Of a DNA stretch of 63,779 nt, positions 12,065-60,637 are shown piece by piece. Location: assembly GCA_003427395.1 (NCBI GenBank), contig BFEA01000006.1, forward strand, positions 1,730,958 through 1,794,736, read 5' to 3'. Source of the stretch: Chara braunii (Eukaryota > Plantae > Charophyceae). Every line of letters starts with the position of its first letter. Position 1 is the first letter of the stretch. Below the pieces are notes generated by a model. The model was given only the letters and a program-made list of their open reading frames with translations, was not told the origin of the DNA and did no database searches. The translations under genes and the position numbers were made by a program.

Positions 12065-12067
<3 letters not shown>

Positions 12068-12176
12068 CCTCCTGATGAGTCGGTGAAACTCCGACGAAAC
12101 AGTTTGTCACAGCCCCTCGTTTGTTGTCCTCTTCTCCCTCTCTGCCTACGGGTTTACCGGGCAGTTCTATTTGACG
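12065..12176 (+). mobile_element. 5'-truncated hammerhead-ribozyme retroelement inside (TA)n
   Basis: CAGCCTC-CTGATGA-GTCGG-TGAAACT-CCGAC-GAAAC plus the shared 3' tail. (TA)n on both sides. Confidence 0.85.
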
Positions 12177-15584: not shown

Positions 15585-16050
15585 TCACGCTCTTTCAATC
15601 TCTGTCCTGGCCAGTTCAATCGTTTCTAGGAACGAGTAGATATTGTTCAACTTTTCGTTAGGCCTATAGGAATATATGATGTATTTAATGTTTTTCTGAG
15701 TTTTCACTACCGTCAGTGCGTGTTCACTCATTAACCTTATGTGGCACTGAAAACTCTCAGGTGCTTCCTCCCCCAAAGTTTTCACTTTATCTTGGTAAAG
15801 TGCGTAGGACACCAATAAGGTGTCTTCACCCCCCATGTTTCCTCTATTTTGCAGAGATTCTCAAACCACTGCCCCAAGTAGAGAGCTTGAGAAAACATAC
15901 TGAAGGAGTTTAACTGCAGTGTCTTTCCACCAAGGATAGGTTGCCAATCTTCGGTGTCGAACAAGCATCCTACGGCCGGCTAGAGTTTGAGATCACTAGT
16001 AACGGTCCACTGCCACAATAAATGACTGCCCTAGCTGTAATGGCAAGGGT
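15585..16050 (-). pseudogene. LTR-embedded hypothetical protein ORF-A (frameshifted)
   Basis: C-terminal 83 aa align with 49092-49337 (+): LLVSYALYQDK/LVIKYSLSRDK and KLNNIYSFLETIE/KLYNAGSFPETVE. Confidence 0.6.
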
Positions 16051-18717
16051 CTCTCTGCTTTAGACCGCCAGCGTGGGAGACAGCCTATCCTCATGAGGTG
16101 TACCCGGTATGATAGCTGGCATAATTTGTCAGATAGCAGGTGTGTCTAGATAAGCCCCTAATTAGAACCCTTCACGGGGTCATTAGTCTCTCTAGGCTAG
16201 GCACACAGACAATCAGCAGTAGTCCCGTAGCCTTGACAAAAAATTAGAAACCGAGGAGATTGGTTCACCCGCCTCACACTTCTGTGAAGACAGGCTCGCG
16301 TCCCCTCAGATAATGCTTGAGAGAAACAGGTCGTGCGTGCCACCAGAGACCTGAGACGAAGGATTGTTCTCTCTCCCCCTTTTTATTTTTATTTTTTATT
16401 TTTTTTGGCATGCATAGGCTCACATACACATCATTCCACTTTTCACAACCGAAGTGATCAAACTGATGCAAAGAACCGCCTCCCTTCAGGAAAGGGGCTC
16501 AACCCTGTCGGGTTTTGACAATTGGGTCATGACCAACGTTGATCAAGGAACGGGCCATCGAATTTTCTCCTTCAGCTAGCCAGAACTGCTAATACTAGTC
16601 TCCGTCCGGTAAGAACTTAGCAATCAAATAAGCAACATTTTTTAACTGTTTTTTCCTTCCCCTACAACTCATTACTCAGGGTCAGCACGCACGGGGAGTT
16701 GATCCTAATCACACTTTTAGAGTCAGCGAGTGTGAACGTTTATAGGCTAGTATGATCTCACGCTCGTGCAGTCACACAGATAATCACACAAATCATGCGG
16801 TAGCACGAGTATCTGTGGGCTCATAAGATCACACACACATATGGTCGTAGAGTTTTGTCACAGGTGTCATACCTGCCAGAGAGATAAGTTAAGACTGTTA
16901 ATGACACCTTTCCTGTTTCATCGTTGATAACCAGTAGAACTGCAGTAATCAAGTAAAGCATCCCTCTTTTTATGCTCCGGTGACATCATCTCGTTTGACA
17001 CACATTATTTTTTCCCACATGGCTTTAGATCACACTAAGGTCATTTTATTTGTATTGACGGGAACCGGCGGCGTCATGCATCTTGCTCGAGGCCAAACCA
17101 CCTTACCTCAGCGAAAAGTGTCCAAGGCCCGTTTGACTTCTCAGTTTGCTTGCCAGTCATCAACATACCTAGGTTGTCTCAGTACCTAGTACATCTCGTG
17201 GAGGGAAAAACAGTTTCTCATCTACTAATAACTTGTACCTCTGCTAACCTTCTACTCGCCTTAGTGAGCAATAGTATGCTCGAAACCATACGACTCACCG
17301 TAGAATCGGATGCGATTGCCCATGCTATCAGTGTAGGCTTCCTCGCTCGAGTCTCATACAAACAGCCCTCAACAAGGGAACACATGATACCTAACGAGAG
17401 CATCGAAGTAGTTTCCACAGGTTTCTAGTGCAGATTTCACTCCTCAATTTAGAGCTCACTATATGCTCACGCACGTCCCACTGGCCACATACAGGTTACA
17501 CAACACGCACACGCATAGTCTTTCTCATCAACTCGTTCAAGGAGAATATGGTGACGACAACCCTCTCACGCGCTGGCAACCCCGCTTTATGGCAAAGACG
17601 AGACAAGGGATGATCACCAGACAGAACATATGAGCCAACCATCCAGCGCCCATAAGGCCTCCCTAAGGGCAATCTCTCTCTTGATTGATGACGCGTGTGT
17701 TTTGATAGCAACTGCTGGGTAGACTCAGACCCACCGCCTGGACCATCTCGCACGTCATTATCCCAGGGGTGGAAAGACACATGCCACGCAACTATACAAG
17801 ATGCCAATCAATAAAAAAAAGAAAAGAAAGGAGGAGCTTCGTCACCTATCATGTGCTAGACTCCAAACTGCTCTCCCTTGGTCCCCCTTCCTCATACGTT
17901 CACAAGGGCTGGAGTGCTTTCCCACTAATCGAACTTGAAGTTCGCATGATGCACTTGCAGGTCCTTTCCTCTTCTGCTTACTCAAGAAGCTATGTCGCTT
18001 GGTACAGGTTCAGAAGGCACGCGCGCTCCCACTAAGGCAGGGACAAAGGCGAGACGATTCCCGAGTGCATGATGAAAGCCTCAGGCACGACTGGAGCAAC
18101 GAGTGGATGGTCCCACCTCTTCCGGATCGCATCCGACTCAGGCATGCCGCACCTCATCACCTACTAACTCTCCCTTAGAGACTCGTTAATACCCATTGTC
18201 TCCCGAGCCTCTCCCCTTTTCGATCCTAGTCGCAACTGTCACGGGCATTCTTGGTCTGTGACTGCCCACCCTCTCAGTTTTCCATCGGTCAACTCAAGGC
18301 AGCTAAACTCGTCATGGTTGATCTGAACGACGTCACCATCCGCGACTCTTCGTGACCCTAGCTGCGCTGCGTTCTCCATAACCGTTCTTGCAAGTTGACC
18401 CGAGTCCCCCGTCCAGTGGTCCTGATCCCTTCGCCGCCATGAGCTGGCTTTTTTTTTTTTTTTTTTCACCCCCGAGCCCATGCTCAAAGGTGCCTATCGT
18501 ACTACGATGATCGTCCCTGATCGCATGGACCACACACACAAAGTATCTTGTGTCCGCTTGCTCGGCGAGCCCACATTGATGCCCACCACTTTTGTCGCAC
18601 CTCCCAAAAAAAGGCACACACTTCTCCCTAATGACCAAGCTGAACTCATGTTCATCAGTCGCATGACGAGGGAAAGCACAACCCGGCCTCCCTCACTTGT
18701 AACTGCCTCTTGCCCTC

Positions 18718-21571: not shown

Positions 21572-21631
21572 GCAAATTGTCGAGGGGTCAACCTCCTGAT
21601 GAGTCGGTGCATTTCCGACGAAACATTCTGT
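21572..21631 (+). ncRNA. Type III hammerhead ribozyme (variant family)
   Basis: GCAAATT-GTC/GAGG-GGTCAA-CCTC-CTGATGA-GTCGG-TGCATTT-CCGAC-GAA-ACATTCTGT: intact core, perfect stems I and II, stem III with two mismatches. Confidence 0.9.
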
Positions 21632-22094
21632 CATCGTCACTTTTTATTGTTTTATTGTTTTCACTACTTTTTTTTTTCAACTTGCTCTTTATGTCTCTTC
21701 GCTTGTTGCCTTGTGTTGTTTGTATGCCCACCCGCCTCCCCCGCGCCATCCACCCTTCGTGCAATTGGTTGTTGTCTAATGCCTTGTTGCTTGTTGTCAT
21801 TCGCTTCATGTCTTGCCTTTGTAGCCTTCGTATGACATTCCATGGGTATCGGCGACGGACGAAGGAAAACATATGGTGCTGGCTATTATGCCAGTGATGA
21901 TGATGGTCTTGCTATCAATCTCACGTGTTTTTTCTTCGAGGGACCCACTTTATTCCTTTGGTCTTGTCTATGGGGATTGTTGGTTCGTGGCATTAGTCAA
22001 TTCTACGGATGGGTAATGCAGTGCAAGCAGCATGTGAATGGATCTAGGTGGAGGTTCCCATGTTTTCGGGTTGCTATGGTTGCTGTTGCACTTC

Positions 22095-28198: not shown

Positions 28199-28236
28199 CT
28201 GTCTCTTATACACATCTAGATGTGTATAAGAGACAG
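28199..28236. other. Nextera mate-pair junction adapter (assembly artefact)
   Basis: Exact CTGTCTCTTATACACATCT-AGATGTGTATAAGAGACAG, i.e. two back-to-back Tn5 mosaic ends. Confidence 0.97.
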
Positions 28237-29732: not shown

Positions 29733-29852
29733 AGGGTTCAGCCTCCTGATGAGTCGGTGAAACTCCGACGAAACAGTTTGTCACAGCCCCTCGTTTGTTG
29801 TCCTCTTCTCTCTCTCTGCCTACGGTTTACCGGGCAGTTCTGTTTGTGACGC
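29733..29852 (+). mobile_element. Hammerhead element inside (TA)n, starting at the cleavage site
   Basis: (TA)n-AGGGTTCAGCCTC-CTGATGA-GTCGG-TGAAACT-CCGAC-GAAACAGTTTGTC...GTTTGTGACGC-(TA)n. Confidence 0.88.
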
Positions 29853-35901: not shown

Positions 35902-36758
35902 NNNNNNNNNNNNNNNNNNNNNNNNNNNNNNNNNNNNNNNNNNNNNNNNNNNNNNNNNNNNNNNNNNNNNNNNNNNNNNNNNNNNNNNNNNNNNNNNNNN
36001 NNNNNNNNNNNNNNNNNNNNNNNNNNNNNNNNNNNNNNNNNNNNNNNNNNNNNNNNNNNNNNNNNNNNNNNNNNNNNNNNNNNNNNNNNNNNNNNNNNNN
36101 NNNNNNNNNNNNNNNNNNNNNNNNNNNNNNNNNNNNNNNNNNNNNNNNNNNNNNNNNNNNNNNNNNNNNNNNNNNNNNNNNNNNNNNNNNNNNNNNNNNN
36201 NNNNNNNNNNNNNNNNNNNNNNNNNNNNNNNNNNNNNNNNNNNNNNNNNNNNNNNNNNNNNNNNNNNNNNNNNNNNNNNNNNNNNNNNNNNNNNNNNNNN
36301 NNNNNNNNNNNNNNNNNNNNNNNNNNNNNNNNNNNNNNNNNNNNNNNNNNNNNNNNNNNNNNNNNNNNNNNNNNNNNNNNNNNNNNNNNNNNNNNNNNNN
36401 NNNNNNNNNNNNNNNNNNNNNNNNNNNNNNNNNNNNNNNNNNNNNNNNNNNNNNNNNNNNNNNNNNNNNNNNNNNNNNNNNNNNNNNNNNNNNNNNNNNN
36501 NNNNNNNNNNNNNNNNNNNNNNNNNNNNNNNNNNNNNNNNNNNNNNNNNNNNNNNNNNNNNNNNNNNNNNNNNNNNNNNNNNNNNNNNNNNNNNNNNNNN
36601 NNNNNNNNNNNNNNNNNNNNNNNNNNNNNNNNNNNNNNNNNNNNNNNNNNNNNNNNNNNNNNNNNNNNNNNNNNNNNNNNNNNNNNNNNNNNNNNNNNNN
36701 NNNNNNNNNNNNNNNNNNNNNNNNNNNNNNNNNNNNNNNNNNNNNNNNNNNNNNNNNN
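35902..36758. other. Assembly gap (also 37917-38786 and 45953-46017)
   Basis: Runs of N. Confidence 1.
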
Positions 36759-37250: not shown

Positions 37251-39092
37251 CAGGGTTACCTGACCGAACGTTCGGCGGCCCCCGGGCTGGCCCCCGAATG
37301 TTCGGGCGTTCGGGGTCCCGTTCGGGGGCCGAACACCTCCAGGTTCGGCCCCCTCCAAAACATGTTTCGGGGCTTAAAAATACTTTTTGTTTTGTGAATT
37401 TTTTTTTGTGAGTTTTCTAAGATGTAACCTACACGCCTATTAATTTTGAAGTCATTCTGCTAAGCCAAAAAAACATTAAAAATCGTCAGAGATGGGGGTG
37501 TCAAAACATGCTCGCCCACTCACTATTTTGTTTTTTTTCACTTTTAACTTTTTGTTTTCACTTTATTTCGGGGCCTAAAAGATTTTATTATTTTTTGAAA
37601 AACTTTTAATGAGTTATTGATTATGTAAACTACATATCTATAAATTTTNAGAGCATTTGACCAGGCCAAAAAATAATTAAAAATCGGCAAAGATGGCGGT
37701 GTCGAAAAGGTGCTGGCACACTCACTCATTTTAATTCTCCTTTTATTATTTCTTATTTTTATCATAGTGTTTGTTTTCTGTATTTGATTTTTAATTTAAA
37801 TTTGGTAAAGATTTTGGATGTAGTGCCCAGAAAAAGTTGTTTTGTTTATTTTTCTCCATAGCATATTGTTTTTTCGGAATTGTTTGAAAACTTTTTTTTT
37901 TTTTTTTTTTTTTTTTNNNNNNNNNNNNNNNNNNNNNNNNNNNNNNNNNNNNNNNNNNNNNNNNNNNNNNNNNNNNNNNNNNNNNNNNNNNNNNNNNNNN
38001 NNNNNNNNNNNNNNNNNNNNNNNNNNNNNNNNNNNNNNNNNNNNNNNNNNNNNNNNNNNNNNNNNNNNNNNNNNNNNNNNNNNNNNNNNNNNNNNNNNNN
38101 NNNNNNNNNNNNNNNNNNNNNNNNNNNNNNNNNNNNNNNNNNNNNNNNNNNNNNNNNNNNNNNNNNNNNNNNNNNNNNNNNNNNNNNNNNNNNNNNNNNN
38201 NNNNNNNNNNNNNNNNNNNNNNNNNNNNNNNNNNNNNNNNNNNNNNNNNNNNNNNNNNNNNNNNNNNNNNNNNNNNNNNNNNNNNNNNNNNNNNNNNNNN
38301 NNNNNNNNNNNNNNNNNNNNNNNNNNNNNNNNNNNNNNNNNNNNNNNNNNNNNNNNNNNNNNNNNNNNNNNNNNNNNNNNNNNNNNNNNNNNNNNNNNNN
38401 NNNNNNNNNNNNNNNNNNNNNNNNNNNNNNNNNNNNNNNNNNNNNNNNNNNNNNNNNNNNNNNNNNNNNNNNNNNNNNNNNNNNNNNNNNNNNNNNNNNN
38501 NNNNNNNNNNNNNNNNNNNNNNNNNNNNNNNNNNNNNNNNNNNNNNNNNNNNNNNNNNNNNNNNNNNNNNNNNNNNNNNNNNNNNNNNNNNNNNNNNNNN
38601 NNNNNNNNNNNNNNNNNNNNNNNNNNNNNNNNNNNNNNNNNNNNNNNNNNNNNNNNNNNNNNNNNNNNNNNNNNNNNNNNNNNNNNNNNNNNNNNNNNNN
38701 NNNNNNNNNNNNNNNNNNNNNNNNNNNNNNNNNNNNNNNNNNNNNNNNNNNNNNNNNNNNNNNNNNNNNNNNNNNNNNNNNNNNNNAAACAAAAAGTTAA
38801 AAGTGAAAAAAAACAAAATAGTGAGTGGGCGAGCATGTTTTGACACCCCCATCTTTGACGATTTTTAATGTTTTTTTGGCTCAGCAGAATGACTTCAAAA
38901 TTTATAGGCGTGTAGGTTACATCATAGAGAACGCACAAAAACAAATTCAGAAAAAAAAAGTTATTTTAGGCCCCGAAAACGTTTTTGGCGGGGGCCGAAC
39001 CTGGAGGTGTTTGGCCCCCGAACGGGACCCCGAACGCCCGAACGTTCGGGGGCCAGCCCAGGGGGCCCCGAACGTTCGGTCATGTAACCCTG
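37251..39092. mobile_element. Further inverted pair of the CCGAAC-rich non-autonomous transposon (spans a gap)
   Basis: TA|CAGGGTTAC...GTAACCCTG|TA. Same family as 28242-29715; other fragments at ~22430-22518, 36759-36893 and 39100-39445. Confidence 0.75.
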
Positions 39093-43279: not shown

Positions 43280-46017
43280 ATGACGGAGGGCGCGGTATCC
43301 CGGCCCTCCGCTGAGTACCCAATACCTACTCAAGGACCCGCTACTTACATGTTACCAGCTCGGGGACCTGTGTGCCACATGGACCTTCTCGGGGTACTGC
43401 CAATGGATTTCTGCAGTGCGCCAAGCATACCCAAGGCGGCGCTCTGCTGCAGGCCAGTTCAGTTGGCGCTTCCCGTAGCAAAAAAGGGGGTGCACCACTG
43501 GACTCTCCTTTGGTCCACGCAGGCTTGGTGCCCTATTGTACGGCAGAGCACTACTGGCCTGTGGCCACGGTAGTCGTCGGGCTCACCCAGGGACACGAAG
43601 GTAGAGGGACTGGTGCGGTCTTTTCTACCGCGCGCCAAGTGTCTCTTAGCTAGGTTATGGGTTAGATGCACAAGCTTGCTGTCACATTCGAACAAGAGAA
43701 GATTAGGGAAGGAAAAGGAAAAGAAAATAAAAAAGTGAAAGGGAGTTATGTGTCAGATTTGCGCGTTGATCTGAACTCGCCTTAGTTGGGATGATCCAGC
43801 GGCTTCAGACCGCAGCGACGTTATAATTCTCTTCCTTCTCTTATTTTTGTTGCTATTATTATTAATTTTATTAGTTGATTCTTCAGACGCTGCTTCCACT
43901 TTCAACTTTTCGTCACTTCGTGGGAAGGAGTGCAAACGGGGTTCGATTTCAAACTCCGATTGGAACTCGGTGGCCTAGACTGGCCGGACCCTTCGCTTAT
44001 CACCCTATGGCTGACCTGTCTGGCTGAGCGCTGCACAGTGGGACCCCAAAAGAGGGGCAACCCCTGACCGCATTGGTAGGAGGCTTATCACCTCCCGCGG
44101 AAGGTCATGAGCCCCCTCCTTACCATCGAACACGGACACTCAATAGGAGTAGACCAATGGCGTGTTTCGAAGGGAAGAGTATGCTCGTCGGTATCCCGTT
44201 ATGGGACCACTGCTTCGGGCCTGTAGTCACTTCACGAGGACTAGCGGTTGGCAGTAGCGCAGTGAGTTTGCTCGTGCCCTGACCGTCGAGATTTGGCCCC
44301 GCGCTTTTCTTAAATTGTTTGATTTACTTTATTTTATTATTTCTGGAACTCTATATTGTTAATGTGAAGAATTTGAAAACCGTCAAGGGGCTATTTGGAT
44401 TTTTGATTTAGAACGCAGGGATCTCGATAAGTAGCGATCCTATAAAAAGTGAGGGGGGATAAGTCAATTGGCTATTGGATTGTCGGTGAAGGCCAGACGC
44501 GCTCCCCACTTTCTAAGAGTTGGGACACTGGCCCCGGCCAGCTGCTTGGTAATATCCCGTCTGCACTATGAGCTCTGGCAGAGAATGGCACGTAGAGTGG
44601 TGCGCTATTCGAGGTTGACGGCCTGATACCGTGCAGTCTATCGAACGAAGTCTGACTATGATGCGTAGCAATGGCCTTTTCGGCTGTAGGCCAAGCCATT
44701 TGAGGTTCTACTGAAGATGGGAGTCTATGTGTGAAGAGGGGGCTACAGTGGACGCTTGCCTGAGCTACAGTAAAAGTGACTGGCTGGCAAGACTAAAAAT
44801 AAACGTCTACGGATGGAAAGAATAGGAGATGAGGGAGGATGAGAAAGTGCAGGGGGTAGTCACCGAGGCTCGCAACCGAGCCGAACGGAGGTGCAGGAGG
44901 GATGGGGTGACTATGGCCCTGAAGGTTACGATCACTTACCATGAAGAGGCGACCTCCACGAGTACTACCAAGCGAGAGCAACAAGAACTAGACCGAGACT
45001 CAGAGGCCGAGTCTGAGGAAAGCGACGCTTAGACCCAGTCCTGGCAAGGACTGGTGCAGTGGAGAAAAAAACATCCATCGGCCGAGTCAGTAGAGGACGG
45101 GCCCGAGGCTACTTCGAGTCAGCGGAGGGATTGAGACTGTGAGCAACAGTTATGTGCGGTCGGTGTAAAGCCGCAAAAGAAGAAAAAGGAGGAGAGTGAC
45201 GGGCATGCACAGTGAGAGTCGGAGTAGAGAGAAGGCTATTCGCGCCCGCGTGGCTCTGTTGATGACGCCAATTCCGAGCGAGTTACGGTCGTGACGCGTA
45301 CGTACTCGGCGGATGGGTCGAGACACGGGCACACTAGTGAAGGTTGACGCCAATAGCCCTCCTGCCCTATCTGTATTTTGATGAAGTCCATCAAGCCTAC
45401 TCGGGAGATAACGAGATGAGAGAGAGACAGAGTCCACGCGAGGTGGCTACGAAGAGACACACACGAAAGTCAGACGTGCTCTGAAGGAAGGTCGTCTCAA
45501 TTTTTTTTCGTTTGTTGACGTCTTGGGATATTACGCCTCGCGCAATTACGGCCAAGGACATAAGCACTCGTGCTTGGACTGGTTGTGATCATAGTAGTCT
45601 TCTCAAAATGTGCGGATAGAGACTAGGTGTGTGTGCTTTGTGCTGTATATGTATGATTAACGTGAACTTGCGTTAACCATCGTCGACGCAGAAATGATAA
45701 GGAGTTGTGCATGTCGGAGAAAGCTATTACTTCAAGAAAGTGGGATCAAGACAATGCCTGCAAGGGGGGGGGGTATTCAGAAGCAGTAAAGTTAGTGACG
45801 ATGAAGATTGAGGGGCAAGCCACGCTACGGCCGTCGGTGAGTCCGGAGCGAACGAGAAGTGAGAAGGAGCTGACCATCCATTCAGACGACATACGATGAT
45901 TAGAGCGGTGCGACCACGTAAGAGGGGAGCTTACTCTGAGAGAGAGAGAGAGNNNNNNNNNNNNNNNNNNNNNNNNNNNNNNNNNNNNNNNNNNNNNNNN
46001 NNNNNNNNNNNNNNNNN

Positions 46018-51199: not shown

Positions 51200-51805
51200 T
51201 GACGAACAAGAAGTGGGATACCCCTGTGCGAGTCATCCTATTATTTGTCTAAGTCTAAACCAGTTGGATTAAACAAGTGGCAGGATACCCTTGTGTGGGT
51301 CATCCTATTGTCTGTCTAAGTCTAAACCAGTTGGACTACACAGGTGGTGGGATACTCATGTGTGGGTCATCCTATTACTTGTTTAAGTCAGACTGTGCAA
51401 TATTCAAACGATAGTAGGTGACTCCAGTGAGGGTCAACCTATTATCAGTTTGAATCTAAACTAATTGACAGAGGAAAAAGGAGGTAGGATACTTATGTGT
51501 GAGTCATCATGTCGCTTGTTTCTTGCTTACTTACGTACAATCTGCTCAAACAGGTAGTATGAGGCTCCCGTGATGGTCATCCTATTACTTGTTTGAGGTT
51601 AGTCTGCATAATACTCAAAAGGTAGTAAGGGGTTCTTGTGAGGGTCATCCTATTGTCTGTTTGAAGTTAGCCTACGCGATATTTGAACGGATAATAGGGT
51701 ACTCCTGTGAGGGTTACCCTATTACTTGTTTGAAGTCATCTGCGCGATATCCAAAGGGTAGTAGGAAACTCCTATGAGGGTTATCCTATTATTTGTTTGA
51801 AGTTA
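51200..51805 (+). repeat. Tandem array of 9 ~67-bp units, each a long hairpin
   Basis: GGGTCATCCTATT-like core near 51231, 51297, 51364, 51431, 51501, 51574, 51642, 51711 and 51778, each preceded by a complementary arm. Confidence 0.88.
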
Positions 51806-52603: not shown

Positions 52604-53422
52604 AGAGAGAGAGAGAGAGAGCAAAGGTATGTAGTATTTTTGCGTATAATACATCAATTATGACTCAAAGTACTACATACCTTGTTTTTCTACATAAAAT
52701 TATTTTCCTTTTTTTTTAAGATTTTGTGGTTGTACGACTTTAGTGGATTTATTATCACGTGGCCTACCCATACTGTTTAGCCATGTGGCTGCGGCTGGGT
52801 CGGCCATCGAACCGGGTAAGTCTTGGCATTGGCCTATCGCCCCCAAGGCTCGACGTCAAACCCCGCGTCCTGCGTCGCGGCCCTATACCCCGCACAACCC
52901 TTTTTTTAGCCCGCTTAAGTCCTGATATTATTTTGGGTAGAATAGGTCTAGTTTTATTCTTTCCATGAGTGCGCATCCCTCCGATCTCGTCGGAGATTGC
53001 GGACGAGTCAAAACTTTCCATAAGCACGTCTCGTTTTCATCAGACCAATTCTCACAAACTTACATCAAGATTCGGACTTCGTCCGACATCGAAAATACAG
53101 GGCAGATACCCTTGTTAGGGTTTCTGTCCCGACAACATTCCCAGGCTACATTGAATGACTTCCACGTCATTGAATTTTATCCAAACACAACATCAGAGGT
53201 GTTTACCAGAAAATCCTGGCAGACAACCTCCCCTTTCCATCAATTATGAGCTCAGACTTTTGACCTGATGCATTAAATTATTGTGGATTTCTTCCCGGAT
53301 GGTTCCAGCATCATCCCACTGGCGGCCATTCAAAATTTTGTCTCTCAGAATGGTACTGGAAGCCCTCCAGCTATATCCAACATAATCCAATCGATTGATA
53401 CTGCTATTTTCAATTGGGGAAT

Positions 53423-53567
53423 TCCCTTGACTGCCGGGAATCTAACCCGGGTCTCTTGAGTTTACGGGGATGCTCTTCACAACACCTCGACGTACACAAC
53501 GCCGCCAGGAATTTAACCTTGGTCTCCCATATACACAAAGATACTCACATTATACTATAGTCAGGGA
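53423..53567 (-). ncRNA. Nested double tRNA-Asp-like structure
   Basis: Two tandem tRNA-Asp-like sequences whose acceptor and anticodon strands pair crosswise (see findings). Confidence 0.7.
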
Positions 53568-54399
53568 GACATCAAAACAAAAAAGGCCTCAAGTATTTCA
53601 TCATCATTCACTGAAAACTTGCGTTTAACCTTATCCTCCAAATGAGTCAGGATTAACCCCTGACAGGTCTTTCAAAATGTATCAATTCTTGGGTTTTAAC
53701 CATTCATGAGAGAAACCATCCATCCACTTCTTCTTGTCATTCATCCAACAGAGTGAGCTCATCTTTCTAATACTCGATAACCTACCATGCAGGACTATTT
53801 TGACTTTGATGTGATTAGCGTCGAGGAGTGGTGTAATCCTTTGAAGGACAATATCCCGACATCAAGCCTCGCTTTAAATTCGGGTCTCACCACCTTCCCT
53901 CCGATTCCGATTTTATGACCCTATCATTCTGCTGCCAATAGAATAGGACAGCCTTGTCCACACAACCCAAGGTTGGTTAGACCTTAGTTATGAGGACAAG
54001 GTGACCCTACCTACTTCAAGGTTAGGAGACCAACCCTATCCTTGCAGTAAATCGTGGTCACCTACTCTACAGACAACGCCCTGATAAAACCACAAAACTT
54101 CCTCCATTTCAACGGTAATGTAGTCACCCCCTTCCTCAAGGAAGGTGACAACATCCTGCTATGGACCAGGAACAAAGTTCCGACACGGGTCTCATTACCG
54201 CCTACGGGGCTCACATCTTTTCAGAATTTTGAACTGTTCAGGAATCACAAATGCCTCTAAATAAGAAAACAAAAAGAAGTTACTACCTAGACTAGGTTTT
54301 CAGCATTTATTTCTCAGATGAAAAATGACCAAAAGTGATATATTTTACATAAATAATAATAAAAACGACTACTGTCCTCAATCTCTTTGAATGAACTTT

Positions 54400-57300
54400 T
54401 GTAAATGAGACCCAGAAACCCAATTTCGACCACGTGCCCCATCCATTTCTTCGATCTCATATGCCCCATGATCTGACTCCTGATAATGCGATATGGTCCC
54501 AAGCACCAACTGTCCAATTTCCTTGACCATTATTTTTCCAGGGATGAATCGTAGAGGAGAATAATATCGCCAATTTCCAATGGCTCCTTACGGACTCGAG
54601 GTCGCCTATCCCATCTCTCTTTATCTGCCTGTCTGCTTTCTGCAGTTGAGGCAGCGGCCTCTTCAATCTTCTCATCTGTGATCATTATTTGTTTTGCTTT
54701 GAGATCAAGTAACTCCTCTGTGGAAAGTTTAGTCTCCAGATCCTGCTTTTGCCAGGTGGTCAGAAAGCTCTCGATTGGGAGCGTCGCATGTCGACCAAAC
54801 CATAGAGTTACAGGAGCGTACCCAGTTATCCGCTTAATGGTAATGTTCTTTACGAACATCGCCGTTCTCAGATAAACATGCCATTTTGATGGATCGTCTG
54901 CACACCATTTTACCAATAAATTTGTTAGAGTAGCGTGGCCTCGTTCAACTGGAGCGTTGGCCTGTGGATGAACTCTAGTGGTGTAACTGTAATTTACACC
55001 GACCTTTCTGAAAAAGACTTGTACATTATCTGCACGAAATTTCCCTCCTCGATCCATCACAAATTCGCGAACAAATGGATATCAAAGATAGAACTCCTCA
55101 ATACATCCGGCCAGGATTTTCCCAGTTCGTTCACGGATTGCGCATCCATCGACAAAGCCAGTCAAGTTATCTCTGGCATCAAAGATATATTTGTATCCAT
55201 TAATTCCACGTGCCATCACCAATAAATCGAGATGCATCACAGCTCCTGACTCTACCACATATCGAGGACTAAGAGGTTCAACATACCGAAGATTTGATCG
55301 CTTTTGACAAAGAATGCAGGAATTACAAAATTCAACAACCATTTTTGCCATTCCTTCCCAGAAACAGAGATGCTGAATCTTTCGTAAGGTAACTCGTGCC
55401 GACTTGTGACCACCGGCAACTCCATCATGTAGTGCGGCAATCACGTCAAGTTGTCTCGTCCTCCCACATACCACTGTCCTAGGGACACCATTATCAGACT
55501 TTTTGAAAGGATGACCATATCTGATAACAAAATATTGACTCTTCAAGCGAACTTCTGGTTTCACCTCATTTTCATCAACTTCCCCATTCAACCATAACCC
55601 AATCTTCTCATAGATTCCATCATATTCATTCTTACGAAAAACTTCTCCAATTTCATTGCTTCCTCCTTCGGCCATCATCTTAAGACGATCCTCCTGAATT
55701 AAGGAATTAACAAGAAATAACAAATTTCCACATATTCTAAAGGCTTTATGAATTTGCTCGTGACCTCCCTCAATTGTCAGAGGTTCGTCTGTAATGTTGA
55801 CTGAGTCAGATAATGCTAAACTCATCATTTGCTCTGCAGTTCTCTCTCCCCAAGGATCTTCTTTAACAAAAACTTCACTCGTTACCAGTTCATAACGCAC
55901 TTGATAAAAATTTGGCGCGTTCCAAATGGATTTTCCAGATCGGGATGAAGCATCTTCCAAATAGCTAATAAAATTAATAGTCAATCGATACTCCCTCTTA
56001 TCCAGAAAATTATCCACAGGGATTGAATCCTCGATCTGGTCCTTAGATGAATCCCATTCGATTCGACTCAATCCATCAGCCCGGTTTTGTGCACCCGAGA
56101 TACACCCAATCTCAAAATCAAATATCCAAATATACGTTAACCATCGAGCAACCATTGGATCCGAACGAGAGTAATTCCTCAGTGATTGAGCCAAAGCTGT
56201 CGGAACACTCTCAAAACAAACCTCCTTCCAAATACGTAATTCATGAATGTACGAAGACAATGAAGGACACCCAACGTTTCCTTTTTGAATTGAGAATAAT
56301 TACGCTCGGCGGTATTCAAAGTTCGACTTTCAAATCTCAACGGTCGTTCTCGCCCTTCCCTGTCTTTTTTAATTAGGACACCACCCAGGGTTGTAGAACC
56401 TGCGTCTGTTTCCACAATGAAGGGTCGATCCGGATCGTTGTCAAAACAAGAAACGTCGAGGATCATCCCACCCTGCCAAAATGCAGCCTTTATATCATTC
56501 ACTGCTGCCTGTTGCCTGGGCCCCCATTCACAATCCTGATTTTTTAGTATCAATTTCCTCAAGTGTTTTACCCTTGCTGGAAACCTTTGGATAAAGATAC
56601 GCCAAAATCCACAAGTCCCAAGAAAACTCCGTACATCCGTGATAGATTTGAAAGGTGTCGGCCATTCCAAAATTTTATTCATTTTTTTTTGCGCCCGGCC
56701 TACGACCTTTCTCATCACATAAAAATCCCAGAATGGTCGCCTCTTGCATGCAGTGTCTGGACTTGACACCACTAGCTGTGAGGTTATATTCTTTTAGCTT
56801 TCGCAGAACCTTTTCCACATCGCGTACATGTTCCCAGAAAAACCTGCGAATACCTGATAACACTTTTGTCTCATCTTTCTCACGAGGTCCTTGAATAGCC
56901 AAATCATCGATATATGGAGAGGTCACTTCAGGACAGAGTGACTGCATGACCCTCATCATGTACCGTTGTACAATTGCGACGACATTTGTCCAACCTTGAG
57001 GTGCTGAACACATATGAATCAATCCCCTAGGCGTATGCATTGCCGTCATTGGTCTATCTGCTGTATACAAGGGGAATTGATCATAACCAGAATACAAATC
57101 AATCAATGTTATGATAGATCTACCTGCACATGATTCCGACAGTAGATCTGCATGTGGAAGCCCACCTACATCTCGAACCGTCACTGCATTCAACCTTTGC
57201 AGGTCCTGGACCCATCTGAGGACGCCGTTCGGTTTAATAAAACAGAACCAAGGAGATGCATATGGCCCATAAGAATAGTCTGCTACTTTCGTTTGAATCT

Positions 57301-58908
57301 TCCCGTCCAGATACTCAATCACTTTCCGGTGATCATCTGGATTCGGATATCGCGGACCTCTTACGTTCTATGGCTCATGCGGTACTGTACGTATCCTGAT
57401 AATTGGAATCATATCGACATCCAACCTTCCTCGCTCGTTATCATCAAAGGCATCCAGATGTGAATCCTTTAAAGTACTTACGAGGAAGTCAGTTTCTGCC
57501 TTGGTAAGAAATTCATCATCTCCAATGATCATTTCCTTGATTCTATCTTCTGTTAATCGACATGGTCCTTCTTCTGCCTTTATCTTCATTGTCTTGATCC
57601 ATTTTCTCTCCTCTTTGTAATAAATCTCTTGGTCCTGGGTGATCAAGACAGGCACGGGCTGCGTTTTTACCCCTACTTTCTTATGCTTGCACTTCGATCC
57701 CGTGACCAACTTCCGTCCTCTAAAAAGGACTCTGCTTGGATGCAGGAGTAACCAGTGTACTTGCCTCTGGAGGTGCGTCCAAACGATATGTTAAGGTCAT
57801 GTTCCCTGCGCCTTCCACATCAGATATCACATCAGCCAAATCCTGGATCAACTGAGGCTTCTGTCGAAAGAAAATCTATTGCCTGCGAGATGTTGGGAAG
57901 GGCAATAGAGAATTCTCTCGGTTCATCATAACCCTCAAATGAATCTTTCTCTCGCCTTAGCTTTTCTGATTCCAAGAAAGAGTAAGATCCCGGATTGAGC
58001 CGATTTCTGGAATTTGCTGGCCCTGTGTTTTCACATTTTCAAACTTCATAATATCCACACACAGGGTCACACAGGGCGACAAACATTGAGCCATCATGCT
58101 TATTGATGATGATGCTCTCAGTTCGGCACAGAAAAGATCTTCCCAATAATACCTCGTGTTCTACTCTGGGTAGAACATAAAAGTAGCTTCGAGCTTTCAC
58201 CTTTCCTACCGCGACTGTGACATCACTTGCCGTGCCACAGAAGGGAGTCGATCCACTCGCGCCTATTAGAAATCCAGTATCAGATCGATAGATCCGGATT
58301 CCTGCCTCGATTGCTTCTTTCTCTCGTATGATATTCATTTCTGCACCATCGTCAACGAGAGGAGGGAACTCACCTTGTCTTACGTGTACCTTCAACAGTC
58401 CAGTGGCAACGCATCGCCAATCCATCTTAGTTCCTGCAGGTGCCCAATTGGCTTCTGGAGAAATAATGTCTCCAATCTTGATAGTCATTATCTTCCTCCT
58501 CGTCAATCGTTGCTTGAGCTTGTCACGGATCTTTGGAGATGCGGCCAAAAATTTCTTTAGCGTGACTAAGTCACGCCGACTCTCCAAAATCCGGTCGACA
58601 ATCTGCTCAATATCAATCCCCTTTTCAATAGGGATTGTATAAACGTTCTTCTTTCGTCGCGGCTCTTCTTCCTCGACAACTTCCTTCTCCTTTTCAGTAT
58701 CGCGCTCAGAAGTACACTGTTTGGCTTGCTGTTCGGCTTGCTGTTCATCCTCGACATGCAACCTTTCGTCTTCCTTCTCAGAGTCGCTTTCTTCTTCGTC
58801 TGGGATGAGGACTTCTTCGACAGGTTCCTTGGAGGCGCCTTCTGCCGCTGTTCTTTTAGTGAATGTTCTCCGGGCCTTTCGTATATGTGGTAATGTTGCC
58901 GGAGCCAT
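54400..58908 (-). pseudogene. Ty3/Gypsy pol (PR-RT-RNase H-integrase), degenerate
   Basis: PR 'LVDDGAEMNII'; RT 'YASPWFCFIKPNG.LRWVQDLQRLN', 'IDLYSGYDQ', 'YIDD'; RH 'IVETDAG...ERNYSQFKKE'; integrase HHCC 'LHDGVAGGH...CNSCILCQ', core 'DRGGKF...HPQANAPVERGH', then 'GPYRI'. Many stops and frameshifts. Confidence 0.95.
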
Positions 58909-60425: not shown

Positions 60426-60619
60426 ATTCCCGTTCAGCATCTTGAGTGACACAAAAAAAAAAACATCACACATTCATATTTCAATTAATTTTTCTTTTTT
60501 CTGTAAATTTTTAGTGACCTTCCATCTGGAAAAAACAAAAACAAGCCTTGGTTGTAATTTTCTTAATATTTTCTTACCCGAGTGTCGTTCAGCTAGAGAC
60601 AAATGGTAGTTTGCTGTTA

Positions 60620-60637
60620 TCCCCGGCAACGGCGCCA
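60620..60637 (-). promoter_or_regulatory. Primer-binding site, tRNA-Asp
   Basis: TGGCGCCGTTGCCGGGGA, 2 nt after ...CTCGACA and upstream of gag. Confidence 0.92.

What the first reader, a model, noticed from the sequence alone, without database searches (positions are those of the whole stretch)
53423..53567. A tRNA inside a tRNA: nested, circularly permuted double tRNA-Asp mimic in the 3' region of a tRNA-Asp-primed Gypsy element
Seen (minus strand): TCCC-TGACTA TA GTAT aatgtga GTAT C TTTGTGTATATGGG agac CAAGG ttaaatt CCTGG CGGCGT tgtgt ACGTCG AG GTGT tgtgaaga GCAT C CCCGTAAACTCAAG agac CCGGG ttagatt CCCGG CAGTCA-AGGGA. Both halves resemble eukaryotic tRNA-Asp, but neither folds alone. The 5' acceptor strand of half 1 pairs with the 3' strand of half 2. 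The 3' acceptor strand of half 1 closes a hairpin with the 5' strand of half 2. The anticodon strands pair crosswise into one 14-bp helix (12 of 14 paired). The result is an outer cloverleaf whose anticodon loop is replaced by a circularly permuted second cloverleaf, with no anticodon. The D-stems covary (GTAT/GTAT vs GTGT/GCAT). Both T-loops have A at the normally invariant C56, which should disable the Pol III B-box; the outer D-loop has U at position 19, which could pair with it, and the inner unit has A8/U14. Inference: an RNA-level selected cis element. It might be an RNase P/Z processing site, a translation element for the ORF-like relics on either side, a nuclease block, or a Gag/RT-binding primer mimic. 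Simple decay of a tandem tRNA capture would not be expected to give crosswise complementarity. I know of no description of this fold.
Basis: partly seen in the sequence, partly recalled or inferred. Interest (0 to 1): 0.92.

Follow-up and report, generated by a model that had tools for sequence, protein, structure and literature searches.

The report
Two-headed primer-tRNA mimic in retrotransposon tail
A family of jumping genes in the stonewort alga Chara braunii carries, just before its downstream repeat, two fused and remodelled copies of the same aspartate tRNA that primes its copying; they fold together into one long RNA rod that evolution has kept, although what it does is unknown.

Summary
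Window 53567-53423 (minus strand) is a 145-nt tandem pair of tRNA-Asp-derived units. It lies in the 3' untranslated region of a decayed Ty3/Gypsy element of Chara braunii, 290 nt before the 3' LTR. The element has a 19-nt tRNA-Asp primer-binding site.

I fetched six more copies from related elements. All seven lie in the same ~400-nt part of the 3' UTR, and none was found elsewhere in ~335 kb searched.

The nested fold (outer stem, 14-bp cross helix, inner hairpin) is 15-48 kcal/mol better than two separate cloverleaves in every copy. Substitutions keep the cross-unit helices paired more often than chance (17 of 20, 12.6 expected, P~0.002). No such excess exists for the independent fold. Five pairs show double compensatory changes.

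- In younger copies each half can still close its own acceptor stem, and half 1 scores 26.8 bits as a tRNA.
- The cross helix follows partly from duplicating a near-palindromic anticodon arm.
- The module lies on opposite sides of a conserved motif in two lineages.
- Sister lineages lack it, so it is dispensable.

Function is inferred only. Other first readers of this scan noted similar tRNA-Asp mimics elsewhere in this genome; those notes are unchecked.

The parts
53423..53567 (-). Whole module: tandem pair of tRNA-Asp-derived units that fold as one nested domain
53499..53567 (-). Unit 1 (half 1), orthologous to unit 1 of the other copies (79% to L001 unit 1, 55% to L001 unit 2)
   Evidence: CM R1 64.9 bits
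53423..53493 (-). Unit 2 (half 2), orthologous to unit 2 of the other copies (73% against 55%)
   Evidence: CM R1 67.8 bits
53559..53567 (-). Outer stem, 5' strand (pairs with 53432-53423)
   Evidence: three pairs of this helix show double compensatory changes between lineages
53423..53432 (-). Outer stem, 3' strand
53541..53555 (-). D-arm-like hairpin of unit 1; this arm plus its linker is 89% identical to the site-A consensus
53526..53539 (-). Cross helix, 5' strand (former anticodon arm of unit 1)
   Evidence: 12/14 paired here, 12-14/14 in other copies
53505..53521 (-). T-arm-like hairpin of unit 1, loop TTAAATT (no C56)
53488..53504 (-). Inner hairpin: 3' acceptor strand of unit 1 paired with 5' acceptor strand of unit 2, 5-nt loop
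   Evidence: paired in all copies, one A-U to G-C double change
53470..53485 (-). D-arm-like hairpin of unit 2
53455..53468 (-). Cross helix, 3' strand (former anticodon arm of unit 2; cannot form its own stem in any copy, 2-4 of 5 pairs)
53434..53450 (-). T-arm-like hairpin of unit 2, loop TTAGATT (no C56)
53646..53673 (-). Motif M: AGAC plus T-arm-like hairpin. It lies upstream of the module here and downstream of it in the six other copies
53700..53715 (-). Anchor U (TTTCTCTC..ATGG), shared by nearly all lineages checked (not matched in L005 and L009). The module follows it directly in the other six copies but not here
53305..53327 (-). Motif Q, a 23-nt block found in 8 of the 12 fetched loci (both module-bearing and module-less lineages); downstream anchor of the module-bearing region
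53154..53171 (-). Covarying hairpin a few bases before the purine tract and the 3' LTR
52760..53134 (-). Start of the truncated 3' LTR (begins TGTCGGGACAG at 53134)
54390..58908 (-). Decayed pol: protease, RT, RNase H and integrase relics with stops and frameshifts
60619..60637 (-). Primer-binding site, 19 nt, complement of the 3' end (with CCA) of tRNA-Asp

Best explanation
The module descends from two tandem copies of the element's own primer, tRNA-Asp, taken into the 3' UTR once in an ancestor of one Chara braunii Ty3/Gypsy clade.

Origin (inferred): reverse transcriptase most likely switched template onto tRNA-Asp packaged in the particle. That route gives a sense-oriented insert.

Remodelling (shown): the pair has become a single RNA domain of the Pol II genomic transcript.
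- The acceptor strands pair across the units, giving an outer stem of 9-12 bp and a 5-6 bp inner hairpin.
- The two anticodon arms have lost their loops and form one 14-bp helix.
- Every T loop has lost C56.

Constraint (shown with modest statistics): the cross-unit helices are kept by pair-preserving and compensatory changes. The D and T arms are kept in sequence.

Function (inferred, my odds about 0.3 for this step): the domain is a protein-binding platform that exploits primer mimicry. It would bring the tRNA-Asp-binding part of the replication machinery (Gag-Pol RT/IN or a host tRNA-Asp-binding protein) to the genomic RNA for packaging or primer placement.

Limit (shown): it helps but is not essential, because sister lineages without it have also multiplied.
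For: - tRNA ancestry: L001 unit 1 hits Rfam tRNA over the full model, 26.8 bits, E 7e-4. The T-stem and acceptor 3' strands match the complement of the element's own PBS at 10-11 of 16 positions. The D-arm string is that of eukaryotic tRNA-Asp (my knowledge).
- Same-tRNA priming: the PBS is seen in the window and in seven fetched loci.
- Single origin of the dimer: unit 1 and unit 2 are orthologous between lineages.
- Family linkage: seven of seven copies lie between pol and the purine tract, none elsewhere in about 335 kb.
- Fold: the nested topology is the minimum-energy fold in all copies (z -2.6 and -3.9). Constrained nested folds are -30 to -47 kcal/mol, against +5 to -30 for two cloverleaves.
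- Constraint, whole structure: nested 93.9% paired, 5 pairs with double changes, covariation score 0.249 against 0.199 in shuffles (0/500). Independent fold 86.1% paired, score equal to the shuffles.
- Constraint, nested-specific helices: 17 of 20 substitution events keep pairing, 12.6 expected, P 0.0018. Independent-specific helices: 12 of 16, 11.5 expected.
- Between lineages: stem strands are 33-54% identical yet paired, while the arms are 79-89% identical.
- The module is among the best-kept parts of the 3' UTR, 0.86 mean pairwise identity against 0.70 and 0.62 for the flanks.
- Precedent for primer mimicry: the HIV-1 tRNA-like element binds LysRS (PMC5113203, PMC5689005).
Against: - There are only seven copies, six of them closely related, and most are dead copies decaying neutrally.
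- The shuffle control does not correct for relatedness.
- The 14-bp cross helix has no double compensatory change, and part of it is inherited from the tRNA.
- In site-A copies the independent acceptor stems also pair, so the two folds are told apart mainly by the window copy and by energy.
- Stems do not evolve more slowly than loops (0.33 against 0.28 events per column).
- D and T stems show no pair-preserving bias.
- L002, L006 and L007 lack the module and form a multi-copy lineage. L005 shows none before the inverted element that interrupts its 3' UTR.
- The anticodon, the main AspRS identity element, is gone.
Confidence: 0.45

Rival explanations
1. It is a neutral fossil. A tandem tRNA-Asp capture is decaying slowly. 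The nested fold is a by-product: duplicated stems pair crosswise automatically, and the tRNA-Asp anticodon arm is nearly palindromic. The similarity between copies reflects descent only.
For: - Both own-acceptor stems still pair in six copies.
- Half 1 is still tRNA-like.
- The cross helix has no double change.
- Substitution rates are equal in stems and loops.
- T2 stems are decaying.
- Lineages without the module multiplied.
Against: - The pair-preserving excess is specific to the nested helices (P 0.0018).
- The outer and inner stems of the window lineage changed on both strands yet still pair, while its own-acceptor pairing fell to 2/7 and 4/7.
- C-to-T changes in unit 1 are matched by G-to-A changes in unit 2. 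This turned the cross helix into Watson-Crick pairs while destroying unit 2's own stem.
- The outer stem extends into non-tRNA flank, reaching 12 bp.
- The module is better conserved than most of the 3' UTR.
Confidence: 0.25
2. It is a transport signal. The tRNA-like domain in the 3' UTR promotes nuclear export of the unspliced genomic RNA or cell-to-cell movement of the RNA. It would resemble retroviral constitutive transport elements in position and the tRNA-like motifs reported in mobile plant mRNAs in kind.
For: - It lies in the 3' UTR 0.3-0.65 kb before the 3' LTR.
- It is an extended hairpin with two repeated sub-domains.
- The D and T arm sequences are conserved.
- Both analogies rest on my own knowledge.
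Against: Nothing here tests it. tRNA export receptors need free mature ends, which an internal domain lacks. Lineages without the module exist.
Confidence: 0.1
3. It is a processing site. RNase P and RNase Z cut at the tRNA-like units, as at MALAT1 mascRNA, and make a shortened RNA or a small tRNA-like RNA, possibly a self-supplied primer.
For: Half 1 of L001 is close to a tRNA (26.8 bits). A weak mascRNA-model hit of 13.6 bits overlaps it.
Against: - The outer stem continues 5 bp beyond a 7-bp acceptor, so the cleavage sites would lie inside a helix.
- The nested fold is far more stable than cloverleaves.
- Cleavage would remove the PPT, U3 and R from the genomic RNA.
- The acceptor 3' strands do not match the 5' half of the PBS, so the product could not prime.
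- The mascRNA score is far below the gathering score of 42.5.
Confidence: 0.07
4. It is an independent small mobile element, a dimeric tRNA SINE or a MITE-like element with terminal inverted repeats, which inserted separately into two Gypsy lineages.
For: - The module lies on opposite sides of motif M in the window and in the six other copies.
- Its ends form an inverted repeat.
- The trinucleotide TAC flanks the L001 copy on both sides.
- Tandem tRNAs inside a Culex Gypsy element were likened to the Twin SINE (PMC3286476).
Against: - No copy was found outside this 3' UTR in about 335 kb of repeat-rich Chara DNA.
- There is no tail, and no target duplication at the window copy.
- The B box is disabled in all 14 units.
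- The 'empty' sites are not clean excision or insertion alleles.
- Differential loss within an array of tRNA-derived hairpins explains the order equally well: five T-loop-like motifs cluster at 53701-53447.
Confidence: 0.08
5. It is a Pol III transcription unit, or a TFIIIC-binding boundary, acting at the DNA level.
For: An A-box-like string is present in unit 1.
Against: C56 of the B box is missing in all 14 units. No T-run terminator follows the module.
Confidence: 0.03

Closest known systems
HIV-1 tRNA-like element (TLE) next to the PBS (PMC5113203, PMC5689005)
   Same: A retroelement genomic RNA carries a mimic of the very tRNA that primes it. In HIV-1 the mimic binds a protein that also binds the primer (LysRS).
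   Different: The HIV TLE is in the 5' UTR beside the PBS. It imitates the anticodon arm and is not derived from a tRNA copy. Here the mimic is in the 3' UTR, is a recognisable tRNA derivative, is double, and has lost the anticodon loops.
Ty3 bipartite 5'-3' primer-binding site (PMC5371799)
   Same: It belongs to the same superfamily, and a 3'-terminal RNA region takes part in primer-tRNA biology.
   Different: The Ty3 3' segment is complementary to the T and D arms of the tRNA and lies in U3. The Chara module has the same sense as the tRNA and lies upstream of the PPT. A crude duplex test against the 5' leader gave nothing.
Tandem tRNAs in Culex cqgypsy_1 and the Twin dimeric tRNA SINE (PMC3286476)
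   Same: Two tRNA-related units lie head to tail inside or beside a Gypsy element.
   Different: The Culex units are intact cloverleaves of two different tRNAs with CCA ends, at the 5' LTR/PBS border, in one element. Here both units come from the primer tRNA, are remodelled into one fold and are inherited by a clade.
Helenus/TRIMp3 and Cassandra: LTR elements with tRNA- or 5S-like sequence in the LTR (PMC10886601)
   Same: A small-RNA-derived sequence is carried and spread by LTR retrotransposons.
   Different: In those elements it lies in the LTR and is read as a Pol III promoter. Here it is internal and the B box is disabled.
Retroviral constitutive transport element (MPMV CTE; my knowledge, not checked here)
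   Same: A structured element of about 150 nt between the last ORF and the 3' LTR, forming an extended hairpin with two repeated sub-domains.
   Different: There is no sequence relation, and the CTE is not tRNA-derived. Function was not tested.
Anticodon-anticodon dimer of tRNA-Asp (GUC is self-complementary; my knowledge)
   Same: Two tRNA-Asp bodies are joined tail to tail through their anticodon arms.
   Different: Here the two bodies are one covalent chain and the loops have been replaced by a continuous 14-bp helix.

Membership tests
tRNA gene or pseudogene (Rfam RF00005) | Cloverleaf scoring at or above the gathering score (29 bits), or an ARAGORN call | tested here: not met
   The window gives no hit even at E 10. 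L001 unit 1 scores 26.8 bits, just below threshold, and unit 2 gives nothing. ARAGORN finds none in the eight loci scanned (L001-L008).
tRNA gene or pseudogene (Rfam RF00005) | Anticodon stem and 7-nt loop within each unit | tested here: not met
   The arms are 14-15 nt instead of 17. Unit 2's own stem has 2-4 of 5 pairs, and unit 1's is almost entirely G-U (four of its five pairs).
tRNA-derived SINE (including dimeric Twin-type) | Intact internal Pol III promoter (A and B boxes) | tested here: not met
   C56 of the B box is absent in all 14 units.
tRNA-derived SINE (including dimeric Twin-type) | Dispersed copies with a tail and target-site duplications | tested here: not met
   All seven copies lie in one Gypsy 3' UTR context, none elsewhere in about 335 kb. 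There is no tail or duplication at the window copy. The whole genome was not searchable.
MITE | Terminal inverted repeats plus a target-site duplication | tested here: inconclusive
   The ends are inverted repeats of 9-12 bp. TAC flanks the L001 copy only, and there is none at the window copy.
Primer-tRNA mimic of a retroelement RNA (HIV-1 TLE type) | Mimics the tRNA that the element's PBS matches | tested here: met
   The PBS is the complement of the tRNA-Asp 3' end. The module is tRNA-derived and shares 10-11 of 16 positions with the PBS complement. Isotype assignment of the D arm rests on my knowledge.
Primer-tRNA mimic of a retroelement RNA (HIV-1 TLE type) | Anticodon-like loop that binds the cognate synthetase; location beside the PBS | tested here: not met
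   The anticodon loops are lost. The module lies about 7 kb from the PBS, in the 3' UTR.
Primer-tRNA mimic of a retroelement RNA (HIV-1 TLE type) | Binds a primer-binding protein | not testable with these tools
   This needs EMSA or CLIP.
mascRNA-type RNase P/Z substrate (RF01684) | Match to the family model; unpaired leader and trailer at a 7-bp acceptor | tested here: not met
   The score is 13.6 bits against a gathering score of 42.5. The outer stem runs on to 12 bp.
Helenus/TRIMp3 | tRNA-like sequence inside the LTR | tested here: not met
   The module is internal, 540-650 nt before the PPT in six copies and 290 nt before the LTR in the window. It is absent from the 5' LTRs.
Ty3-type 3' PBS segment | Complementary (antisense) to the primer tRNA arms | tested here: not met
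   The module has the same sense as the tRNA.

The most novel reading that the evidence does not exclude
Chara Ty3/Gypsy elements have repeatedly captured their own primer tRNA and domesticated it into 3' UTR RNA domains. This nested, two-headed version would be a selected cis element that recruits the primer-selecting machinery (RT/IN or a host tRNA-Asp-binding protein) to the genomic RNA. That would make it a 3' UTR counterpart of the HIV-1 tRNA-like element, but one made from the primer itself and shaped like a covalent anticodon-to-anticodon tRNA dimer.
Probability: 0.3. Interest if true: 0.8.

Novelty: new variant of a known kind. Interest (0 to 1): 0.62.

Why it matters
Retroviruses and LTR retrotransposons must select one host tRNA and place it on their RNA. 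How LTR retrotransposons outside yeast do this is largely unknown. A clade that carries a remodelled double copy of its own primer, kept by compensatory change, offers three things:
- a natural experiment on primer mimicry;
- a clear case of host-RNA capture by reverse transcriptase becoming a structured cis element;
- an RNA architecture (two tRNA bodies fused through their anticodon arms) that I did not find described in five full-text literature searches.

It also warns annotators that tRNA-like hits in Chara can be retrotransposon parts. If the module is neutral, it is still a clean example of how tandem duplication of a hairpin-rich RNA creates an alternative super-fold that can then take over.

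Tried and rejected
- Metagenome scans with two degenerate patterns from the module found nothing. The bacterial and viral collections were not scanned, because they cannot hold Chara DNA.
- The last contig look-up (L012) gave a copy truncated inside integrase, with no 3' UTR. L005's 3' UTR is cut by an inverted element just after motif M.
- Long-range pairing of the module with the U5/PBS leader: RNAduplex gave z -1.7 to +0.3 against shuffles in four elements. The method is crude on long inputs, so this is no support and no strong evidence against (one search timed out).
- A coding explanation: no conserved ORF of 45 aa or more covers the module on the sense strand in L001 or L010.
- T-arm hairpin census of the 3' UTRs: only patchy results.
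- The middle of the rod: RNAalifold pairs the D1 strand with the T2 strand instead of forming two hairpins. Substitutions favour neither version, so this part is left open.
- The weak R1 hit at window 54151-54227 (10.6 bits) lacks a D arm and was dismissed.

Full report
WHAT IS THERE. The genome is Chara braunii: the neighbouring ORFs hit only Chara proteins of assembly GCA_003427395.1. On the same strand lie decayed protease, RT, RNase H and integrase relics of a Ty3/Gypsy element. A 19-nt primer-binding site at 60637-60619 is the complement of a tRNA 3' end with CCA. From my knowledge of plant tRNAs and from earlier follow-up notes of this scan, that tRNA is tRNA-Asp. The 3' LTR begins at 53134, after a small hairpin and a short purine run. 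The module therefore sits in the 3' UTR, about 820 nt after the end of integrase and 290 nt before the LTR. ARAGORN and Rfam see no tRNA in the window.

IS IT MORE THAN CHANCE. The other strand is weaker. The stronger argument is comparative. Using Chara proteins related to the window's integrase, I fetched twelve loci. Six of them (L001, L003, L004, L009, L010, L011) hold the same two-unit module at 69-77% identity to the window copy (BLAST against three of them). A covariance model of the single unit (R1) found nothing else convincing in about 335 kb of Chara DNA on both strands.

ORIGIN. Unit 1 of the young copy L001 (LTRs 97-98% identical) matches the Rfam tRNA model end to end, at 26.8 bits and E 7e-4, just under the gathering score. 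The T-stem and acceptor 3' strands of the units agree with the complement of the element's own PBS at 10-11 of 16 positions. The D-arm string is the hallmark of eukaryotic tRNA-Asp (my knowledge). Unit 1 of the window is 79% identical to unit 1 of L001 but 55% to its unit 2. Unit 2 behaves the same way, 73% against 55%. The dimer therefore formed once, before these lineages split. The insert has the sense of the tRNA. I therefore infer that reverse transcriptase switched template onto packaged tRNA-Asp during minus-strand synthesis. This step is not shown. An earlier follow-up note reading U6 snRNA fragments in Chara LTR elements as such captures makes it plausible.

THE FOLD. I aligned the seven copies (A5) and wrote down two structures. 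The nested one has an outer stem, a cross helix, an inner hairpin and four D/T arms. The other has two independent cloverleaves.
- Cross helix: 12-14 of 14 pairs in every copy, and mostly Watson-Crick.
- Unit 2's own anticodon stem: only 2-4 of 5 pairs everywhere.
- Unit 1's own anticodon stem: almost entirely G-U (four of its five pairs).
- Energies: folds constrained to the nested structure reach -30 to -47 kcal/mol, and those constrained to two cloverleaves +5 to -30. The unconstrained fold of L001 is -55.5 kcal/mol, z -3.9.
- Outer stem: in the six site-A copies it extends into sequence that is not tRNA-derived, reaching 12 bp.

IS THE FOLD SELECTED.
- Whole structure, nested: 93.9% of cells paired, 5 pairs with changes on both sides, covariation score 0.249 against 0.199 in column shuffles (0 of 500 reach it).
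- Whole structure, independent: 86.1% paired, and a score equal to its shuffles.
- Events among the six site-A copies: 17 of 20 distinct substitutions in the nested-specific helices keep the pair, against 12.6 expected when the same mutation types are placed at random (P 0.0018). The independent-specific helices give 12 of 16 against 11.5. The shared D/T stems give 4 of 12 against 3.9.
- Between the window and the site-A consensus: the strands of the outer and inner stems are only 33-54% identical (the inner 5' strand is 80%) yet remain paired. The arms are 79-89% identical.
- Within site-A 3' UTRs: the module belongs to the best-kept block, 0.86 mean pairwise identity against 0.70 upstream and 0.62 downstream.

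These results point to constraint on the rod helices for pairing and on the arms for sequence.

1. Crosswise complementarity is what a tandem duplication gives for free. Each 5' stem strand of copy 1 pairs with the matching 3' strand of copy 2. In the six site-A copies both own-acceptor stems still pair, 6/7 and 7/7.
2. The cross helix shows only one-sided changes that pass through G-U. Relative to a canonical tRNA-Asp arm, C-to-T changes in unit 1 face G-to-A changes in unit 2, which is suggestive, but the ancestor is inferred.
3. The module is not fixed in place. Site-A copies read anchor U, module, motif M, motif Q. The window reads U, M, module, Q. L002, L006 and L007 read U, M, Q with no module.
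4. Motif M itself looks like a variable-loop-plus-T-arm relic. Five T-loop-like motifs cluster within 255 nt of the window, out of 16 on that strand of the whole window. The region may therefore be a turning-over array of tRNA-derived hairpins. Differential loss explains the changed order as well as relocation does.
5. Lineages without the module have several copies, so it is dispensable.

FUNCTION. Nothing here tests function.
- Pol III use is unlikely, because every one of 14 T loops lacks C56 and no terminator follows.
- RNase P/Z processing is unlikely, because the outer stem runs past the acceptor, the nested fold dominates, and cleavage would sever the PPT and LTR from the genome.
- A self-made primer is unlikely, because the acceptor 3' strands do not match the 5' half of the PBS.
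- A crude test for pairing with the U5/PBS leader was negative.
- What remains is a protein-binding or transport role. I favour primer mimicry, by analogy with the HIV-1 tRNA-like element that binds LysRS (PMC5113203, PMC5689005). Against AspRS itself stands the loss of the anticodon.
- Ty3 uses its 3' end in primer placement, but through antisense pairing (PMC5371799), which is not the case here.

COMPARISON AND NOVELTY. tRNA-derived sequences inside LTR elements are known: Helenus TRIMs carry them in the LTR as Pol III promoters (PMC10886601), and a Culex Gypsy element has two intact tRNAs at its LTR/PBS border (PMC3286476). I found no description of a clade-wide, remodelled double copy of the primer tRNA in the 3' UTR that folds as one nested domain (five full-text literature searches). 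I rate it a new variant of a known kind.

OTHER NOTES OF THIS SCAN. Other first readers noted single and tandem tRNA-Asp mimics in the 3' UTRs of other Chara elements. Those notes are unchecked and were not used as evidence. One weak single unit in the distant locus L008, 155 nt before its LTR, fits them.

LIMITS. The genome could be sampled only through twelve protein-anchored loci.

Noticed in passing
window 28199-28236: Back-to-back Tn5/Nextera mosaic-end sequences form a perfect palindrome beside a (CA)n run. This is most likely library adapter left in the assembly, so the join there may be artificial.
   Followed up: partly
window 53171-53154 (-); L001 about 15995-16015; L006 about 16960-16980; L008 about 16515-16535: A small hairpin lies just before the purine tract and 3' LTR in every lineage. 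It covaries (stems GCGAC/GTCGC, ACGAC/GTCGT, ATGAC/GTCAT) around a GGGAC-like loop, so it is a likely cis element of plus-strand priming.
   Followed up: partly
window 53327-53305 (-), and eight of the fetched loci (L001-L004, L006, L007, L010, L011): The 23-nt block GGCCGCCAGTGGGATGATGCTGG is kept almost unchanged in the 3' UTR of eight of the twelve fetched loci, both with and without the module. Its function is unknown.
   Followed up: no
window 53701-53447 (-): Five GGTTA[AG][AT] T-loop-like motifs lie within 255 nt, out of 16 on that strand of the whole window. Motif M (53673-53646) is AGAC plus a 6-bp hairpin with loop GGTTAAT. This suggests an array of tRNA-derived T-arm relics beyond the two recognised units.
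   Followed up: partly
L005 13692-13740 and 922-970 (minus strand): Two tRNA-Asp PBS copies lie 30 nt apart at the edge of an inverted element, and the arrangement occurs twice in the locus. A doubled PBS is unusual.
   Followed up: no
L008 16316-16396: A single weak tRNA-Asp-like unit (R1 15 bits; no Rfam hit) lies 155 nt before the 3' LTR of a distant Gypsy lineage. It has the same 5' string as unit 1 and GTC in a hairpin loop.
   Followed up: partly
window 12065-12154, 21589-21678, 29739-29828: A repeat family carries a hammerhead-like core (CTGATGA, stem, GAAAC) next to (TA)n. Other first readers have already noted it.
   Followed up: no
window 51200-51805: An array of 67-68-nt units with hairpin potential lies downstream of the truncated 3' LTR.
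   Followed up: no
window 35902-36758, 37917-38786, 45953-46017: Runs of N (assembly gaps) lie inside repeat-rich sequence.
   Followed up: no
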